Positions 334-14,410 of a stretch of 64,000 bases of DNA are shown piece after piece. Within the stretch, counting starts at the first letter, position 1; each line of letters begins with the position of its first letter. Both the position numbers and the translations under genes were made by a program. The stretch comes from Octopus bimaculoides (taxonomy: Eukaryota): the NCBI RefSeq assembly GCF_001194135.2, contig NC_068982.1:184213192-184277191 (forward strand), in the 5' to 3' direction. The notes under the pieces were generated by a model. It had not been told where the DNA came from, searched no databases, and was given only the letters and a program-made list of their open reading frames with translations.

Positions 334-1640
334 TATGTCAAGACCATTAAGATTGAAATGTCCGATTTTGAATTGAAACTTTTACTTTATCTCAACAAAA
401 AACAATGCAGTTAATTAAAGTATGCGCTTAAATTATCAACACAATTTTACCATTTTATCGGTAGCTTATTTATACCGGCAGCGAAGAATTCTGGAGAGCA
501 GATGGTAATGAAATCACGAAAGGCTGTTTTTTGCATCATCTTCAGATTTGAAGATTTTTCCCTGCAAAAAGTTGTCTAATGCCTGGAAAACGTAACAGTC
601 AGTTGGTGAAAGTTCTGGTGAATACGGTGGATGACAGAGTACTTCCAAGTTCAGTTTTTGTAACTCGAGTAGCATTCTTTGGGCAACATGTGGTCGAGCA
701 TTGTCTTGCATGTCTCTATTGACCAATCTCAGCTGTTTAATTGCAAGTTCGCTCATCGTTTCATCCAATTCGTTGATGTATACATCCGCTGTATACATCC
801 GCTGTATACATCCGCTGTATACATCCGCTGTATACATAATAAAGCTGTAGCGGATGACACCAGCGCTGGACCACCAAACAGACACTATTAGCTATTTTTG
901 GTGAACATTGTTTTTTTGGATTGTGTTTTGGCACTTCGTCTCTATCCAACCACCGTGCAGAATGCTTGCTATTGTTGAAAAGAATCCATTTTTCATCGCA
1001 CGTAACAATACGATGCAAAAATAGTTCGCTTTTATGCTGTGACAGTAAAGAACAGCAAGTTTCAAGATGACGTGTCATTTGATGCTCGTTCAGTTCGTAT
1101 GGTACCCACTTGTCCAGCTTCTTTACCTTGCCGATTTGTTTCAAATGGTCCAATACAGTTGGAATCGAAACATCAAACCTTACTGTTAACTCACGTGTAG
1201 TATGAGATGTATCCGCTTCCACTACAGTTTCCAGCTCATCATTATCCACTTTGGTCCCAGGTCTACCATGGGGCTGATTTACAAGAGTAAAGTCACCAGA
1301 CCGGAACATCTCAGACTATCGACGTACAGTGTGCTCATTCGCCACATCTTCACCAAATACCTCATTGGTGTTTCGAGCTGTTGTGATGCATTGATTCCAC
1401 GACGGAACTCACATTCATAAACAACACGAATTTTTTTATCTATCCATAAGTTCACAGAAATTTATTTACAAGAGAAAACTCACAATATAATCAGACACCA
1501 AGAATTGTATTTCAAAAAGTGATGTTATAACTCTTCAATATTGTAAAACAAAAAACTGTCAGGATAAAATATTAGAGTTAACTACTGTCAAACTTGGTGC
1601 ATAAGAAAATTGGACATTTCATTCTTAATGACCTGATATA
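334..1640 (-). mobile_element. Full-length but dead mariner (DD34D) DNA transposon, about 1.3 kb
   Basis: Transposase start at 1447. Motifs WVPYEL, TCDEKW, DNARPH and HPPYSPELSPTD with exactly 34 residues between the last two Asp; frameshifts and stops. Imperfect TIRs at about 336-369 (TCAAGACCATTAAGATTGAAATGTCCGATTTT) and 1606-1638 (reverse complement TATCAGGTCATTAAGAATGAAATGTCCAATTTT). Confidence 0.9.
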
Positions 1641-4460: not shown

Positions 4461-5758
4461 AGACACCCAGTTGTCATCAGCTCTGTCCACTTCGCATATG
4501 TAAGTACCACAGTGAGGTATAGTAAACTGTTGTAAAAAGTGGTACAGATTAATGAAATCAACCTTTTGTTAGGTAATGGTGTGAAAACTAAAGAGATGCT
4601 AAAATTATTCTGGACTCACAATTATATCCAAGTGTGAAGTTGTTAGTCACAGTGATTGTGTATACACGTAAGTATAGTTTCACAGTATCCATAGTCTATG
4701 CTCATGTTTTAGATTGCTAAGTTGATAATAGCGACTATAACGCTGTTAGTTCATATCACATAACCAGTACGGACCTGGATCAACGGTCATGACACTGGTG
4801 GCTTAGTATAGTTTGCTGTAAATATTTAGTTTGCTGTGCATCAGGGACCGTTCAATACACAATCTTTTGTGATGTAGTGTTACCTGTACTGTATCAATGA
4901 CCAGCGGTAAAGCCTTCATCCTTTGTCGTCTTCTCCGCAGGGTTGGCCGTGTAATCCGGATGCTGACGAACCAGCTCCCAAAGATAGTACTCTTCGGCTG
5001 CTAGAATGAAAAACAATTGTCAGCTCGAAACTGTGAGCGTAAAGGGATATTACTAAATACTTTAATGCTCTCTCCCATTTTCTATCATGGGTGACATTCA
5101 TGTCATTATTAAGACGGTTTCAGTCGGGATTACATTTCTTGATACATTTCTGGGGAATTAACGTTCCCCCAAAATTTAGCCCGATGTATCAAGATCCCCA
5201 CAAAATATAAAGTATGAATCTACCCCTAAAATATAAAGTGCCAATGTACTTTATAACCTGCAAATATAAGACGTGTATGCAACCNNNNNNNNNNNNNNNN
5301 NNNNNNNNNNNNNNNNNNNNNNNNNNNNNNNNNNNNNNNNNNNNNNNNNNNNNNNNNNNNNNNNNNNNNNNNNNNNNNNNNNNNNNNNNNNNNNNNNNNN
5401 NNNNNNNNNNNNNNNNNNNNNNNNNNNNNNNNNNNNNNNNNNNNNNNNNNNNNNNNNNNNNNNNTATATATATATATATATATACATTGCAAGGTGTTAA
5501 TTTATAAACAAAAATTCATTTGCAAGACAATAAAACATTTGAGAAAATACTTTTTCGGGAATTTATTCCAAAATATCCATTATTAAACATTTTATTAGTT
5601 TATTAACATATATCTCCTCACTTGTACATAAATAAATCTACTCGCTTATTTCAATATTCATTATTATCATCATAAAATCATTAGTAGCAATAATAATTAT
5701 AAAGGTTGCATTAATTGTTATTTTTTAAATTAGTAGTTGCAGTACTTGTACCATTCTT

Positions 5759-6406
5759 TTACAATCGATGGAGAGTTGAAAGAGCGTTCTTCCATATATA
5801 TTGGTTAAACTTGGCACCGGATATATATATTACTGTCATCATAGGCCACATGGACAAAAAGAAGAGCAAGCGAGAATTGAATTTAAATGAGTCGAGAAAT
5901 AGATAGACCCAAGAGCCAGTGTTTGTCCTCAGAAACAAAACAGTTGTCTGATAGGAAGTTGTAATCATGACAATTCCAATGAGATGAGCCAGGACCTGGA
6001 AATAAGGATGGTAAACCAGGAATTTCTCAATGAGAACCATAAAGAGAGGAAGAGAATGTATTATGTGGTTGTTAACATCTCTTAACAGGTCAATAATAAA
6101 TTCAGTGTCCATAAAAAATATACTCCAGAAGATCACGGAGACAAAGATGCCCATTGGGAAGACGATCGAATTGAAGTAGTGCGTCAGGATTTCTCGGAAG
6201 ATTCTGTGGTTTGATTTCAACGAAAGGATAATATCATAGACTAAACTCAATAAGAAGAAAAGCCACAATATCCATTGATTCCATAAACTCAATACATTTA
6301 AGTTATGCGTGATAATATACCAATTGTGCCATTTATTCTTCAGTATTCCATACGTCAGCACAAAAAAACAAGTTGAGTGAAATAATAGACGAACCTTTAA
6401 TGCCAT
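5759..6406 (-). CDS. AIG1-like: AIG1/ADTRP (FAR-17a) family membrane hydrolase, copy 1 (215 aa, single exon, Ser at the nucleophile position)
   Basis: Uninterrupted hydrophobic ORF. Family motifs recognisable against human AIG1/ADTRP: N-terminal L-x-F-H, NVLS-LWN (AIG1 KFLT-FID), FPMGIFV..FW..F.D (AIG1 FPVGVFV..FW..Y.D), NHIIH-SLP..VLIE (AIG1 NHGMH-TTV..ILIE), GSWVYLFLD (AIG1 GMWVYPFLE) and C-terminal G...NQYIW. Ser40 codon AGT at 6289-6287; His117 codon CAT at 6058-6056. Confidence 0.9.
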   Translation of the reverse strand: MALKVRLLFHSTCFFVLTYGILKNKWHNWYIITHNLNVLSLWNQWILWLFFLLSLVYDIILSLKSNHRIFREILTHYFNSIVFPMGIFVSVIFWSIFFMDTEFIIDLLRDVNNHIIHSLPLFMVLIEKFLVYHPYFQVLAHLIGIVMITTSYQTTVLFLRTNTGSWVYLFLDSFKFNSRLLFFLSMWPMMTVIYISGAKFNQYIWKNALSTLHRL

Positions 6407-6850
6407 TTCCGTAACGTATCAATTGCTTTATCCAAACTGTTCACTAGATAATGTTCTTTTGAATTAATATACGAGCAATTAGTGTTTTACACAATATATA
6501 TATATAAATACTTTTTCTTTTTTGTATGTAAGTGCTTCTGTAACGTAATTTTCTAGCTATCATAAATAACAGGAACCAGATGAAGTAAGAAGATTCAAAG
6601 TAAAAAACTGATAGACATAATATCTTTTTATCAGTTGATTTCTTTGTCGATTTGTTTTCTTTTATCTATTTTAGGCTCGATTCTTCTTGGCTTTATATTT
6701 TAGTGTAACTTCTATTTCAACCTCATTTTTCTCTTCGCCATTTTCATTTGATCCAAGTTCTAACGCAGAGTCACGAAGCTCTGATATATCGACTACTGGT
6801 GACGTCATAAAAGACACCTACTTTAGAAAGTCACTTGATTCGTGACGTTA
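6407..6850 (-). promoter_or_regulatory. Conserved upstream module of AIG1-like copy 1
   Basis: TGACGTCA at 6800-6807, second TGACGT at 6843-6848, CGCCATTTT (YY1-like) near 6736-6744, TAACGTAA at 6541-6548. Alignable to the upstream regions of copies 2 and 3. Confidence 0.6.
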
Positions 6851-7582: not shown

Positions 7583-8647
7583 GTCTCGTATATTTACTGT
7601 TAATTGTTTACACTCTTTTCTTCTACTAATATTCAATACACATGAGTAATAAATAACTTTGCTCTCGACATTAACTAAGAACGAATCTAACTTTAATGAC
7701 ATCACCACGCTGGATGCGAGCTGCCACTAGTTTCATTTTGAAAACAACTGACTTTTGAAAAACTATCTTATTTTTAACAGTGCAAGCGTAATATCGTAAC
7801 GAAACATTTCTCACGATAGCCTTGAGAACTCACGTGGTTGCGAAAGAAATTAACCGCCCAGTCACACTTGTGTTAAAAGACACATCTTTCATGTAAATTT
7901 TAAATATATTAATACATATTGGCAGATCATGTACCCTCATTTTCTTTTGCTTTCTGGGGAAAATTTCTTTATGATGCTGAAAAAAAAGACGCTTGCCCAT
8001 GGTCCCACACAGTGGGATTGAAGTCGGAACCAGTTGGTTGGGAAATGTACGTACGTACGTACGTATGTATGTATGTATGTATGTATGTATGTATGTATGT
8101 ATGTATGTATGTATGTATGCATGTATGTATGTATGGATGTATGGATGGATGTATGCATGCATGCATGTATACATGCATGTATGCATGTATGTATGTATAT
8201 ATGTATGTATATATGTATGTATGTATGCATGAATGTATGCATGCATGTATGCATGTATGTATGTATATATGTATGTATATATGTATGTTCCGGATTAAGG
8301 TCCCTAAGAGAGAAAATAATTTACAAGACGATTCATAATTTTTGAAATCATTTTCAGGGCATTTATTCCTAAATAAGAAATCAACATTCTGTCAGTTTGT
8401 ATTACTTCACTTACAAAGACCATGAGCACAGCACTTTCTTCCGGCTTAAACTGTGTAAAAGAGACAAAAACAAATGTATCTACATACAACTGTTGCCCGT
8501 TTACCTCAATACACTTCTTTCTCCTCATCATCATCAGCATCAACATCATGATGATCAATGATGATGATGATGATGATGATAAATAATAGCACGGATTGTA
8601 TTATTGCATTTAAGATAGTAGCAGCAGTACTTGTAATTAATGTTAAT

Positions 8648-9304
8648 TTACGATTGAGTCAAGCTTGAAAGAGCGTTCTTCCATATTAATTCATTGATTT
8701 TGGCACCGGATATATATACTGCTGCAATCATAGGCCACATAGATAAAAAGAAGAACAAGCGAGAATTGAACTTGGATGAATCGAAGACTAGATAGGCCCA
8801 AGAGACAGTATTTGTTCTCAAAAATAAAACTGTTGCTTGGTAGGCGGCTGTAATAACAACGATTCCGATGAGGTGAACTACAATTTGGAAATAAGGATGG
8901 TAGACTAGAAATTTCTCAATGAGAACTAAAATGAAAGGAAAGCAGTGTATGATGGGGTTATTCACGTCTGAGAACAGTGCCATTGCAATTTCTCTGTCGA
9001 TCAAAGATATAAGCCAGAAGGTGACGAAATCAAAGGAGCCTATTGAGAAGACGATTGAATTGAAGTAGTGTGTGAGGAGCTGTCGGAAAATCCTTTGGTT
9101 AGACCTTAACAAAAGGATAATATCGTAAAGAACGCTCAATCCGAAGAAACTCCACATAATCCATAAATTCCATTTCGTCAATATATTCAAGTTGTGCAAG
9201 ATTCCAAAGTACTTCTTCCCTTTCATCAGATGCAATGCAAACATCAACATTACGACAGAGATGATGTGAAAAACTAGACGAATCACTAACGACATTTTGC
9301 TCAT
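8648..9304 (-). CDS. AIG1-like: AIG1/ADTRP family membrane hydrolase, copy 2 (218 aa, single exon, most divergent)
   Basis: Colinear without gaps to copy 1 (130/215 identical by manual count). Thr43 (ACG, 9178-9176) and His120 (CAC, 8947-8945) retained; DRE motif as in AIG1. Met4 aligns with the start of the other copies. Confidence 0.88.
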   Translation of the reverse strand: MSKMSLVIRLVFHIISVVMLMFALHLMKGKKYFGILHNLNILTKWNLWIMWSFFGLSVLYDIILLLRSNQRIFRQLLTHYFNSIVFSIGSFDFVTFWLISLIDREIAMALFSDVNNPIIHCFPFILVLIEKFLVYHPYFQIVVHLIGIVVITAAYQATVLFLRTNTVSWAYLVFDSSKFNSRLFFFLSMWPMIAAVYISGAKINELIWKNALSSLTQS

Positions 9305-9730
9305 GTATCGATTGCTTATCCAAACTGTTCTCTAATAAATAATGTTCTGAATTGACACTTCAATAATTATTGTCCAACGCAATGTTTAGTTTTTGGTTGT
9401 GGGTGCTTTCTGTTATGTAATTTTCTGTCTATCATAGACAACAGGCAACAAATGAGTGTTAAAATTCAAAGCAAACATGTGATAGACATAAAACGTGTGG
9501 TCGTTGTACTTCCCTCTTTTTATTACATGGTGTCCTAGGCATTTCTTTTATTCCTTTCCCTTTTAGATTCAGACCTCCGGGGGGTTTGTGTCTTTTAATA
9601 AAACTTTATTTTCACCATTTTCATTAGATTCAAGTTTCAATACAATGTAGCGAAAGTTTGAGATGTCGACTACTGGTGACGTCATAGAAGACACACTTTT
9701 TGGAAATTCACCTGATTCATGACGTTGTCT
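9305..9730 (-). promoter_or_regulatory. Conserved upstream module of AIG1-like copy 2
   Basis: TGACGTCA at 9677-9684, TGACGT at 9720-9725, TTATGTAA (D-box consensus) at 9413-9420, CACCATTTTCATT near 9613. Confidence 0.6.
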
Positions 9731-13232: not shown

Positions 13233-13276
<44 letters not shown>

Positions 13277-13343
13277 TAATAATAATAGAGATTGCATTAG
13301 TTATTACATGTGAATAAGAAGTTGTGTCACTTGTAACATTCTT

Positions 13344-13991
13344 TTACGATCGATGGAAATTTGCAAGAGCGCTCTTCCATATCATATCGTTAATTTTGGC
13401 GCCGGATATATATACTGCTGTGATCATAGGCAACATAGAGAAAAAGAAGAAGAAGCGAGAATTGAACTTATATGAATCGAGGAATAGATAAACCCAAGAG
13501 GTAGTGTTTGTCCTCAGAAACAGAACAGTTGATTGATAGGACGCTGTGATAAAGATAATTCCAATAATGTGAGACATAACATTAAAATATGGATGGTAAA
13601 CCAGGTATTTCTCAATGAGGACCATAACGAAGGGAAGACAGTGTATGATATGGTTATTAACGTCTGTGAACAGTACGATAACATGATCATCGTCGATGAA
13701 ATATATACTCCAGAAGATTAAGAAAACGAAGGTTCCCATTGGAAAGACGATCGAATTGAAGTAGTGCGTCAAGAATTCCCGGAATGTTCTTTCTTTAGAC
13801 TTCATCGAAAGTATAATATCATAAATTAAGCTTAACAGGAAGAAAATTCCTAAAAGCCATTGATTCCATATTGTTAAAACATTCAAGTTGTGTAAGATTC
13901 CAAGAAAGCTATTCCATTTATTTTTCAGTATTGTATACGTCAGCATTAAAATACAAGTAGTGTGAAATAACAGACGAATCATTAACGCCAT
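13344..13991 (-). CDS. AIG1-like: AIG1/ADTRP family membrane hydrolase, copy 3 (215 aa, single exon)
   Basis: Colinear without gaps to copy 1 (150/215 identical by manual count). Thr40 (ACA, 13874-13872) and His117 (CAC, 13643-13641) retained. A-rich context before the ATG. Confidence 0.9.
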   Translation of the reverse strand: MALMIRLLFHTTCILMLTYTILKNKWNSFLGILHNLNVLTIWNQWLLGIFFLLSLIYDIILSMKSKERTFREFLTHYFNSIVFPMGTFVFLIFWSIYFIDDDHVIVLFTDVNNHIIHCLPFVMVLIEKYLVYHPYFNVMSHIIGIIFITASYQSTVLFLRTNTTSWVYLFLDSYKFNSRFFFFFSMLPMITAVYISGAKINDMIWKSALANFHRS

Positions 13992-14410
13992 TTTTTTTCA
14001 AGTATCAAGCAAACTGTTCGTTAAATAATGTTCTTCTGAACTGATATACAAACAATTAGTTTCATTCAATACATATATAATTTCTGTTTGTTACGTAATT
14101 TTCTATTTTCTAGCAAAAGTAGATAACAGGAAACCGCTATTAAGATCCAAAGCAGGAAAAGGCAATAGATATAAATTGTACTTTTCTCCTTTTTATCAGT
14201 TATTTAAATTTCTTTCTTCTTTTATTTTACTCTTTTCGGTCTAAATTCTTCTTGGCTTCGCGTGGTTTAATGAAACTTCTGTTTCAACCGCATTCCTGCC
14301 GTCGCCATTTTCATTAGATCAACTTCTACTACAGTGTCACGAAGATTTGAAATGCTGACTTCTGATGACGTCATAGAATACATCCATTTTTTAAAGTCAC
14401 CTGAACAGTA
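13992..14410 (-). promoter_or_regulatory. Conserved upstream module of AIG1-like copy 3
   Basis: ATGACGTCAT palindrome at 14365-14374, TTACGTAA at 14091-14098, CGCCATTTT near 14303-14311. Confidence 0.6.

What the first reader, a model, noticed from the sequence alone, without database searches (positions are those of the whole stretch)
6287..6289. Copy 1 has a natural Thr-to-Ser swap at the catalytic nucleophile while keeping the His
Seen: the aligned motif is NVL-S-LWN (AGT) in copy 1, NIL-T-KWN (ACG) in copy 2 and NVL-T-IWN (ACA) in copy 3; His117 is kept. AGT is one transversion from ACT (Thr). Established: the family is unusual in using an internal Thr nucleophile. Inference: copy 1 is a Ser-His dyad variant that could differ in rate, substrate or inhibitor sensitivity, so the array offers a natural test of why the family uses Thr. 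It could also be a tolerated or inactivating change.
Basis: partly seen in the sequence, partly recalled or inferred. Interest (0 to 1): 0.7.

Follow-up and report, generated by a model that had tools for sequence, protein, structure and literature searches.

The report
Ser-for-Thr nucleophile in AIG1 paralogue
One of three tandem, intronless AIG1/ADTRP-like membrane-hydrolase genes really does carry serine where the family's catalytic threonine sits; the change is fixed, expressed and under purifying selection, but it is not unique, because all advanced-snake ADTRP orthologues sampled carry the same swap.

Summary
Copy 1 (5759-6406, minus strand) encodes NVL-S40-LWN, with codon AGT at 6287-6289. 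Copy 2 has ACG and copy 3 has ACA, both Thr. S40 and H117 align with T47/H131 of human ADTRP and with the Thr/His of a mammalian AIG1.

The codon is not an assembly error. Contigs of four runs of the same organism match exactly, including an RNA run. AGT is also kept in three related taxa. Copy 1 is intact and constrained (dN/dS 0.04-0.11). All three copies appear in one RNA run.

Ser is rare at this column: 2 clear and 2 ambiguous cases among about 134 family representatives, and 0 of 87 in a second set. It is not unique, though. Every snake ADTRP orthologue that covers the site has Ser (viperids, colubrids, elapids, a dipsadid), and so does a springtail homologue. The wider AIG1/TMEM164/GPC1/YwaF/YpjA superfamily is already described as nucleophile-variable and His-invariant.

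The most likely reading is a tolerated, conservative swap that leaves a working Ser-His dyad. Nothing found here shows a change in rate, substrate or inhibitor sensitivity. RNA contigs show no majority editing of the codon; low-level editing could not be tested. Interest is modest.

The parts
6287..6289 (-). Codon AGT = Ser40 of copy 1, in the column of the family's catalytic Thr (ADTRP T47, AIG1 T43)
   Evidence: unchanged in contigs of organisms A, B and C and in L001-L003
6056..6058 (-). Codon CAT = His117 of copy 1, in the column of the catalytic His (ADTRP H131, AIG1 H134)
5759..6406 (-). Copy 1: intronless 215-aa PF04750 (Far-17a/AIG1) ORF
   Evidence: E 1.3e-21, 77.5 bits; AlphaFold2 model with pLDDT 87.3 and pTM 0.85, all-helical; RNA contig depth 384
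8648..9304 (-). Copy 2: 218-aa PF04750 ORF with Thr43 (ACG, 9176-9178) and His120 (8945-8947)
   Evidence: RNA contig depth 642
13344..13991 (-). Copy 3: 215-aa PF04750 ORF with Thr40 (ACA, 13872-13874) and His117 (13641-13643)
   Evidence: RNA contig depth 139
5653..6849 (-). Duplicated DNA unit around copy 1: the CDS plus about 440 bp upstream and about 100 bp downstream. It is 70-74% identical to 8609-9726 and 13239-14404
   Evidence: blastn between the three regions

Best explanation
Copy 1 is a functional, expressed paralogue of the AIG1/ADTRP family of six-helix membrane acyl-hydrolases. The TM2 nucleophile Thr was replaced by Ser through a single ACT-to-AGT transversion, after copy 1 split from copy 3 and before the four sampled taxa diverged. 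The partner His on the fourth helix and every other near-invariant family residue remain. The most likely mechanism (inferred, not shown) is unchanged chemistry: His117 activates the Ser40 hydroxyl, which attacks a lipid ester to give an acyl-enzyme that is then hydrolysed or transferred. On this reading it is a Ser-His dyad version of the Thr-His enzyme. The swap is best read as a conservative, tolerated change, not a demonstrated functional innovation.
For: Shown. The codon and its alignment to ADTRP T47/H131 and to the AIG1 Thr/His are confirmed. Thr is present in copies 2 and 3, in L004 and L006, and in the distant clade members P0005 and P0006, so Ser is derived. AGT is kept in organism A (4 runs), organism B (a DNA-type and an RNA run), organism C, and contigs L001-L003 of a more diverged taxon. 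Copy 1 is under purifying selection: 3 nonsynonymous against 19 synonymous changes versus L001 (omega 0.04, binomial p 1e-10), and 3 against 7 versus organism C (omega 0.11, p 0.001). Among 32 family columns that are at least 80% conserved, all departures of copy 1 but one are shared with copy 3 and nearly all with copy 2. T40S is its only private departure from a family-conserved residue that the rest of the clade keeps, whereas copy 2 also departs at P87S, V92D and H117P. Copy 1 is in RNA contigs of X4 (depth 384) and X16 (depth 62.5). The AlphaFold2 model is confident (pLDDT 87, pTM 0.85), with S40 inside helix 35-62 and H117 at the helix 111-117 / 119-130 junction, as published for the family (TM2 nucleophile, TM4 His). 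Independent precedent for a lasting Ser at this position comes from snake ADTRP orthologues of ten species in four families plus a springtail protein, all with the His motif intact where the chain reaches it. The superfamily is described as using Ser, Thr or Cys with an invariant His.
Against: No enzymology exists for this protein or for any Ser-bearing family member. In the related enzyme TMEM164, a C123S nucleophile mutant had negligible activity, so nucleophile swaps are not always tolerated. The octopus-like clade is divergent, only about 25% identical to vertebrate AIG1/ADTRP. It lacks several family-conserved residues in all three copies, including the W-K motif before the nucleophile and the P after Y168, so even the Thr-bearing copies are not proven hydrolases. 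Purifying selection shows that the protein matters, not that catalysis does. The Ser40-His117 distance could not be measured, because the tool returns no coordinates.
Confidence: 0.6

Rival explanations
1. Adaptive sub- or neofunctionalisation. The less hindered primary hydroxyl of Ser changes acylation or deacylation rate, substrate range or inhibitor sensitivity, and this difference is why copy 1 is kept alongside the Thr-bearing copies.
For: Copy 1 evolves most slowly of the three copies in both species comparisons: 1.5% against 2.3% and 3.4% DNA divergence to organism C, and 3.4% against 10.2% and 7.6% to the L001/L006/L004 taxon. Its omega against that taxon is lower (0.04 against 0.31 and 0.23; Fisher p 0.0005 and 0.007). 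Ser has been kept across four taxa.
Against: There is no sign of positive selection: omega between paralogues is 0.28-0.33. In the closest comparison (A against C) all three copies are similarly constrained, with omega 0.11, 0.15 and 0.05. Orthology of L004 and L006 to copies 3 and 2 is not proven. All three copies are found in the same single RNA run, so no expression divergence is visible. Ser-for-Thr is among the most conservative exchanges.
Confidence: 0.18
2. Copy 1 is catalytically impaired or dead and is retained for a non-catalytic role such as lipid binding or scaffolding.
For: TMEM164 C123S is inactive. Family members with non-nucleophilic residues at this column exist, for example Glu in P0097 and Pro in P0086. 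A related clade (P0006, P0157, P0158) has lost the His motif yet keeps an open reading frame in several contigs, so non-catalytic members plausibly occur.
Against: Ser is a competent nucleophile in most hydrolases. His117, N113, H114 and the other conserved residues are retained under strong constraint. The same swap has persisted across a large snake radiation in the ADTRP orthologue.
Confidence: 0.17
3. The Ser codon is recoded at the RNA level: A-to-I editing of AGT to GGT would give Gly, so the protein differs from the genomic prediction.
For: None was found. It remains possible only because editing at low or tissue-specific levels cannot be seen in assembled contigs.
Against: RNA-run contigs of organism A (X4, depth 384) and organism B (X16, depth 62.5) read AGT and show no difference from the DNA across the codon.
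Confidence: 0.03
4. Sequencing or assembly artefact, or a private mutation of the reference individual.
For: The window is a gapped draft assembly with twenty runs of N.
Against: Contigs from four runs and four samples of organism A are identical. The k-mer index finds all sampled words of 6215-6406 in 14 runs from 10 samples. The same codon is present in three other taxa.
Confidence: 0.01

Closest known systems
Mammalian AIG1 and ADTRP (PF04750), Thr/His integral-membrane FAHFA hydrolases
   Same: Significant Pfam match. Predicted multi-helix membrane fold. The His aligns with H131/H134 and the nucleophile column is shared. T43A and H134A are used as catalytic-dead alleles of AIG1 (PMC11139994). 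The active-site Thr is stated in PMC11139994 and in bioRxiv 10.1101/2022.07.06.498872.
   Different: Ser replaces Thr at the nucleophile. Identity is only about 25%. The genes are intronless and tandemly triplicated. The W-K-[FY]-L-T context is N-L-N-V-L-S. The residue after the His is Ser in copy 1 and Cys in copies 2 and 3, not Thr. No activity data exist.
Snake ADTRP orthologues (Crotalus tigris, C. horridus, C. adamanteus, Agkistrodon contortrix, Vipera latastei, Pantherophis guttatus, Ahaetulla prasina, Notechis scutatus, Pseudonaja textilis, Erythrolamprus reginae)
   Same: The same Thr-to-Ser replacement in the same column: WKYLS(F/V)L against human WKYMT47LL. NHGMHT is kept in the nine that reach it; the truncated Pseudonaja chain (P0266) ends at NHGM. 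The state is fixed across a clade.
   Different: They are orthologues of a characterised enzyme, multi-exon vertebrate genes, and an independent origin of the swap. They are arguably a better natural T-to-S test than the gene in this window.
ATGY superfamily (AIG1/TMEM164/GPC1/YwaF/YpjA), described as nucleophile-variable and His-invariant
   Same: Six-TM core with the nucleophile on TM2 opposite a His on TM4. Ser, Thr or Cys are reported at the nucleophile position in YwaF/YpjA, and Cys in TMEM164 (bioRxiv 10.1101/2022.07.06.498872).
   Different: That variability was described between distant families at 10-15% identity. Here it occurs inside PF04750, between paralogues that are 60-70% identical and lie 3-8 kb apart.
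Orchesella cincta 'Androgen-induced protein' (ODM96578.1, P0147)
   Same: A PF04750 member with GRWKFLSVWN, giving Ser at the nucleophile column with the His kept.
   Different: An arthropod protein and an independent origin. It is known from a single sequence only.

Membership tests
PF04750 Far-17a/AIG1 family (homology) | Sequence match to the family HMM above the curated gathering score over nearly its full length | tested here: met
   77.5 bits against a 24.5 cut-off, profile positions 10-205 of 206. Profile search retrieves named AIG1 and ADTRP proteins.
PF04750 Far-17a/AIG1 family (homology) | Multi-pass helical membrane core (six TM helices) | tested here: met
   AlphaFold2 model with pLDDT 87.3 and pTM 0.85. 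Helices at 2-26, 35-62, 68-99, 101-130 (kinked), 138-163 and 176-214. This is a prediction only. No solved structure of the family was found.
AIG1/ADTRP-type threonine hydrolases (Thr/His dyad enzymes) | Thr nucleophile on TM2 (AIG1 T43, ADTRP T47) | tested here: not met
   Copy 1 has Ser40 (AGT) in that column, while copies 2 and 3 have Thr. Copy 1 is therefore a homologue of the family but not a threonine hydrolase in the strict sense.
AIG1/ADTRP-type threonine hydrolases (Thr/His dyad enzymes) | Invariant His on TM4 (AIG1 H134, ADTRP H131) | tested here: met
   H117 aligns with H131 of human ADTRP. The column is His in 155 of 157 and in 89 of 90 non-gap sequences.
AIG1/ADTRP-type threonine hydrolases (Thr/His dyad enzymes) | Fluorophosphonate-probe labelling and FAHFA ester hydrolysis that depend on the dyad | not testable with these tools
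   This needs expression and biochemical assay.
ATGY superfamily (nucleophile-variable, His-invariant membrane acyl enzymes) | Ser, Thr or Cys on TM2 opposite an invariant His on TM4 in a six-TM core | tested here: met
   Ser40 lies in helix 35-62 and His117 at the start of the fourth long helix. The definition is taken from bioRxiv 10.1101/2022.07.06.498872. Spatial proximity of the two side chains could not be measured.

The most novel reading that the evidence does not exclude
Copy 1 and, independently, snake ADTRP are natural Thr-to-Ser nucleophile conversions that measurably change catalysis, for example faster acylation, altered deacylation or transacylation balance, or different carbamate or fluorophosphonate sensitivity. 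If so, a closely related Ser/Thr paralogue trio in one locus could be used to explain why the family otherwise holds on to Thr.
Probability: 0.18. Interest if true: 0.55.

Novelty: new variant of a known kind. Interest (0 to 1): 0.3.

Why it matters
AIG1 and ADTRP are among the few hydrolases thought to use an internal threonine, and why Thr is used in place of Ser is unknown. Here a fixed, constrained Ser version sits next to two Thr paralogues of 60-70% identity, which gives a compact set for swap experiments (S40T in copy 1, T-to-S in copies 2 and 3). The wider result found here is probably more useful. The same swap is fixed in snake orthologues of ADTRP, which are directly comparable with the characterised human and mouse enzymes. 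So Thr is not obligatory in this family. Inhibitor or probe work that relies on an 'active-site threonine' should not assume it across species.

Tried and rejected
- **Primary paper:** Parsons et al. 2016 (PMC4837090, doi 10.1038/nchembio.2051) is not held. The T43/H134 and T47/H131 assignments therefore rest on PMC11139994, PMC8394805 and the TMEM164 preprint, on my own recollection, and on the numbering recovered in alignment. PMC8394805 numbers the His differently (His181 and His149), apparently from other isoforms.
- **T43S data:** no paper with T43S data on AIG1 was found.
- **Solved structures:** a PDB sequence search and a Foldseek search found no solved relative. The best hits were chance matches to cohesin SA-2 and to GPCRs at E > 0.05.
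- **Structure geometry:** the model tool returns no coordinates, so the Ser40-His117 geometry could not be measured.
- **First protein search:** the search with copy 1 returned only 4 proteins.
- **Wide read layout:** The 5' end and any UTR intron of the 2458-nt RNA contig remain unknown.
- **Population check:** a last layout on four more organism-A runs laid nothing, although the index says they hold the words. Direct population evidence is therefore four runs.
- **Editing:** only assembled contigs were available, not raw reads, so low-level RNA editing and rare alleles cannot be assessed.
- **More distant taxa:** the organism F contig ends at 6285, two bases short of the codon. Contigs of organisms G and I do not reach it and organism J laid nothing, so the swap could not be dated further back.
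- **'Copy 1 is the most constrained copy':** considered and held back. It holds against the L001/L004/L006 taxon, but not in the A-C comparison, and orthology of L004 and L006 is unproven.
- **Human AIG1 anchor:** It was afterwards replaced by database proteins P0096 and P0226.

Full report
**What is in the sequence.** The window is a gapped, AT-rich, microsatellite-rich draft eukaryotic assembly with twenty runs of N. The source organism is coded.

Three uninterrupted ORFs lie on the minus strand:
- copy 1 at 5759-6406 (215 aa);
- copy 2 at 8648-9304 (218 aa);
- copy 3 at 13344-13991 (215 aa).

All three match Pfam PF04750 (Far-17a/AIG1) at 77.5, 59.2 and 70.6 bits against a cut-off of 24.5. 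tblastn finds no fourth copy in the window. The copies are 60-70% identical in protein. The duplicated DNA unit is about 1.1-1.2 kb: the CDS, about 440 bp upstream and about 100 bp downstream. They therefore arose by tandem DNA duplication of an already intronless gene. A distant relative on a contig from another organism (L009) is also a single ORF.

**The observation.** The plus strand at 6287-6289 is ACT, so the coding strand reads AGT, Ser40, within N-V-L-S-L-W-N. Copy 2 has ACG (9176-9178) and copy 3 has ACA (13872-13874), both Thr. His117 is CAT at 6056-6058.

**Is it the nucleophile column?** I aligned the three copies with 150 representatives of 50%-identity clusters retrieved by a profile search of 1.84 billion proteins, and separately with 91 mostly named proteins from a second search.

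S40 and H117 fall in the same columns as T47 and H131 of a protein named human ADTRP (P0226). They also match the ...WKFL-T-FIDL... and ...NHGM-H-TT... residues of a protein named AIG1 of Manis javanica (P0096). T47/H131 and T43/H134 are the numbers I recall from Parsons et al. 2016, which the library does not hold. PMC11139994 uses AIG1 T43A and H134A as catalytic mutants and speaks of the active-site threonine. PMC8394805 gives Thr43 and Thr47, with the His numbered for other isoforms.

Pairwise BLASTP of human ADTRP against copy 1 aligns NHAMH131T with NHIIH117S. Its ungapped offset of 7 also puts T47 on S40. The AlphaFold2 model is confident (pLDDT 87.3, pTM 0.85). It places S40 inside helix 35-62 and H117 at the junction of helices 111-117 and 119-130. 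This agrees with the published description of a TM2 nucleophile facing a TM4 His.

**Is it real, fixed and old?** Contigs of three DNA-type runs and one RNA-type run of organism A, from four samples, are identical to the window over 5700-6460. The k-mer index finds every sampled word of 6215-6406 in 14 runs from 10 samples of organism A.
- Organism C differs at 10 coding positions, none in the codon.
- Organism B differs only at 6386 within 6180-6420, in both a DNA-type and an RNA-type run.
- Contigs L001-L003 from a more diverged taxon are 93% identical over 1064 bp, have 22 coding differences and also read AGT.

Thr is present in copies 2 and 3, in their best-matching genes in that taxon (ACT in L004, ACG in L006) and in the two distant clade members P0005 (ACC) and P0006. 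Ser is therefore derived on the copy-1 lineage and predates the split of these taxa. More distant taxa could not be scored. One contig ends two bases short of the codon.

**Is the gene alive?** Copy 1 has an intact frame in all four taxa. Against L001 it shows 3 nonsynonymous and 19 synonymous differences (dN/dS 0.04; binomial p 1e-10 against neutrality). Against organism C it shows 3 and 7 (0.11; p 0.001).

Among 32 family columns that are at least 80% conserved, all departures of copy 1 but one are shared with copy 3 and nearly all with copy 2. T40S is its only private departure from a family-conserved residue that the rest of the clade keeps. Copy 2 additionally departs at P87S, V92D and H117P.

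All three copies are present in contigs of one RNA-type run, X4, at depths 384, 642 and 139. Copies 2 and 3 were absent from X36 and copy 2 from X37, two further RNA-type runs of the same study. The k-mer index finds no copy-1 words in either run. This suggests tissue-restricted co-expression.

Against the L001/L006/L004 taxon, copy 1 looks significantly more constrained than copies 2 and 3 (omega 0.04 against 0.31 and 0.23). In the A-C comparison the three copies are alike (0.11, 0.15, 0.05). Orthology of L004 and L006 is not proven, so I do not rely on that contrast.

**How unusual is Ser here?** In the first set the column holds T 123, S 5 and other residues 9, out of 137 non-gap sequences. 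One of the five Ser is copy 1 itself. Two are clear: P0105, pit-viper ADTRP, and P0147, a springtail protein. Two are ambiguous: a sawfly isoform with an alternative N-terminus, and a fragment. In the second set, 87 of 87 non-gap sequences have Thr.

The swap is nevertheless not unique. A follow-up search with the viper protein showed W-K-Y-L-S at the position of human W-K-Y-M-T47 in every snake ADTRP orthologue that covers the site:
- Crotalus tigris, C. horridus and C. adamanteus;
- Agkistrodon contortrix;
- Vipera latastei;
- Pantherophis guttatus and Ahaetulla prasina;
- Notechis scutatus and Pseudonaja textilis;
- Erythrolamprus reginae.

NHGMHT is intact in the nine that reach it; the truncated Pseudonaja chain ends at NHGM. 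The orthologue of a characterised FAHFA hydrolase has thus carried Ser through a large radiation.

The TMEM164 preprint already describes the AIG1/TMEM164/GPC1/YwaF/YpjA superfamily as nucleophile-variable and His-invariant, with Ser, Thr or Cys in the bacterial branches. It also reports that TMEM164 C123S is inactive.

**RNA editing.** RNA-type contigs of organisms A and B read AGT, so there is no majority recoding to Gly. Contigs drop minor variants and no raw reads were available, so low-level editing is untested.

**Interpretation.** The best-supported reading is a conservative, tolerated Thr-to-Ser change that leaves a working Ser-His dyad in a constrained, expressed enzyme (confidence about 0.6; the chemistry is inferred). 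Rival readings are:
- an adaptive shift in kinetics or specificity, about 0.18; nothing supports it beyond retention and slow evolution;
- a non-catalytic protein, about 0.17; a sister clade, P0006, has lost the His motif, which shows such members can exist;
- recoding by RNA editing, about 0.03;
- an artefact, about 0.01.

By homology copy 1 is a member of PF04750. It is not a 'threonine hydrolase' in the strict sense, because that feature was tested and is not met. It fits the broader definition of the nucleophile-variable superfamily.

**Verdict.** The proposed significance shrinks, because the same natural swap exists and is fixed in snake ADTRP, and because nucleophile plasticity is already described for the superfamily. 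This is a new variant of a known kind and of modest interest. Its practical value is as one arm of a simple set of swap experiments.

Noticed in passing
P0105, P0162-P0166, P0258-P0262, P0266 (database proteins, not in the window): Every snake ADTRP orthologue that covers the site (viperids, colubrids, elapids, a dipsadid) has Ser where human ADTRP has the catalytic T47; the His motif NHGMHT is kept in all that reach it (P0266 is truncated at NHGM). I found no mention of this in the papers read.
   Followed up: yes
P0006, P0157, P0158 (Logan contigs; relatives about 40% identical to copy 1): A related clade keeps the Thr (FLFLTFWN) but lacks the NNHIIH segment, through a deletion of about 9 residues with Val in the His column. 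It is still an open 206-aa frame in several contigs, and its Pfam score is lower (33.5 bits). It is a candidate non-catalytic member.
   Followed up: partly
window 8648-9304 (copy 2); 9304: Copy 2 departs from near-invariant family residues at P87S, V92D and H117P (the NH motif before the catalytic His). In organism C its ATG is TTG (9304 T>A), so translation there may begin at the Met that corresponds to Met1 of copies 1 and 3.
   Followed up: partly
window 6053-6055, 8942-8944, 13638-13640: The residue after the catalytic His is Thr in 84% of the family. It is Ser in copy 1 and Cys in copies 2 and 3. PMC8394805 states that mutating the corresponding AIG1 Thr to Ala did not affect activity.
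   Followed up: partly
window 5700-6460, 8600-9350 and 13300-14040 compared with organisms B and C and with L001, L004, L006: Divergence for the same species pair differs about threefold between the copies: synonymous divergence A-C is 0.054, 0.072 and 0.149, and DNA identity to the L-contig taxon is 93%, 84% and 86%, flanks included. The cause is unexplained. It could be local rate variation, gene conversion or hidden paralogy.
   Followed up: partly
window 13300-14040: Half of the differences between organism A and organisms B and C in copy 3 are plus-strand A>G (12 of 24 in X20). That is T>C on the coding strand, so it is not the direction expected of A-to-I editing, and these are DNA-type runs.
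   Followed up: no
window 5700-6460, 8600-9350, 13300-14040 in runs X4, X36, X37: All three copies appear in contigs of one RNA-type run (depths 384, 642 and 139). Copies 2 and 3 are absent from X36 and copy 2 from X37, and the k-mer index finds no copy-1 words in either. This suggests tissue-restricted co-expression. The copy-1 RNA contig is 2458 nt and extends about 1.6 kb 5' of the ORF; its structure was not resolved.
   Followed up: partly
window 514-1309, minus strand: Overlapping ORFs with weak matches to mariner-type transposase domains (PF01359 at E 1e-4 and PF13358 at E 4e-3, both below the gathering score). This is probably a decayed transposon.
   Followed up: partly
P0097, P0086, P0140 (database proteins): A few PF04750 representatives have non-nucleophilic residues in the Thr column with the His kept: Glu in LKFLEFWN, Pro in FKYIPYIN and Phe. 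These are either inactive members or gene-model errors.
   Followed up: no
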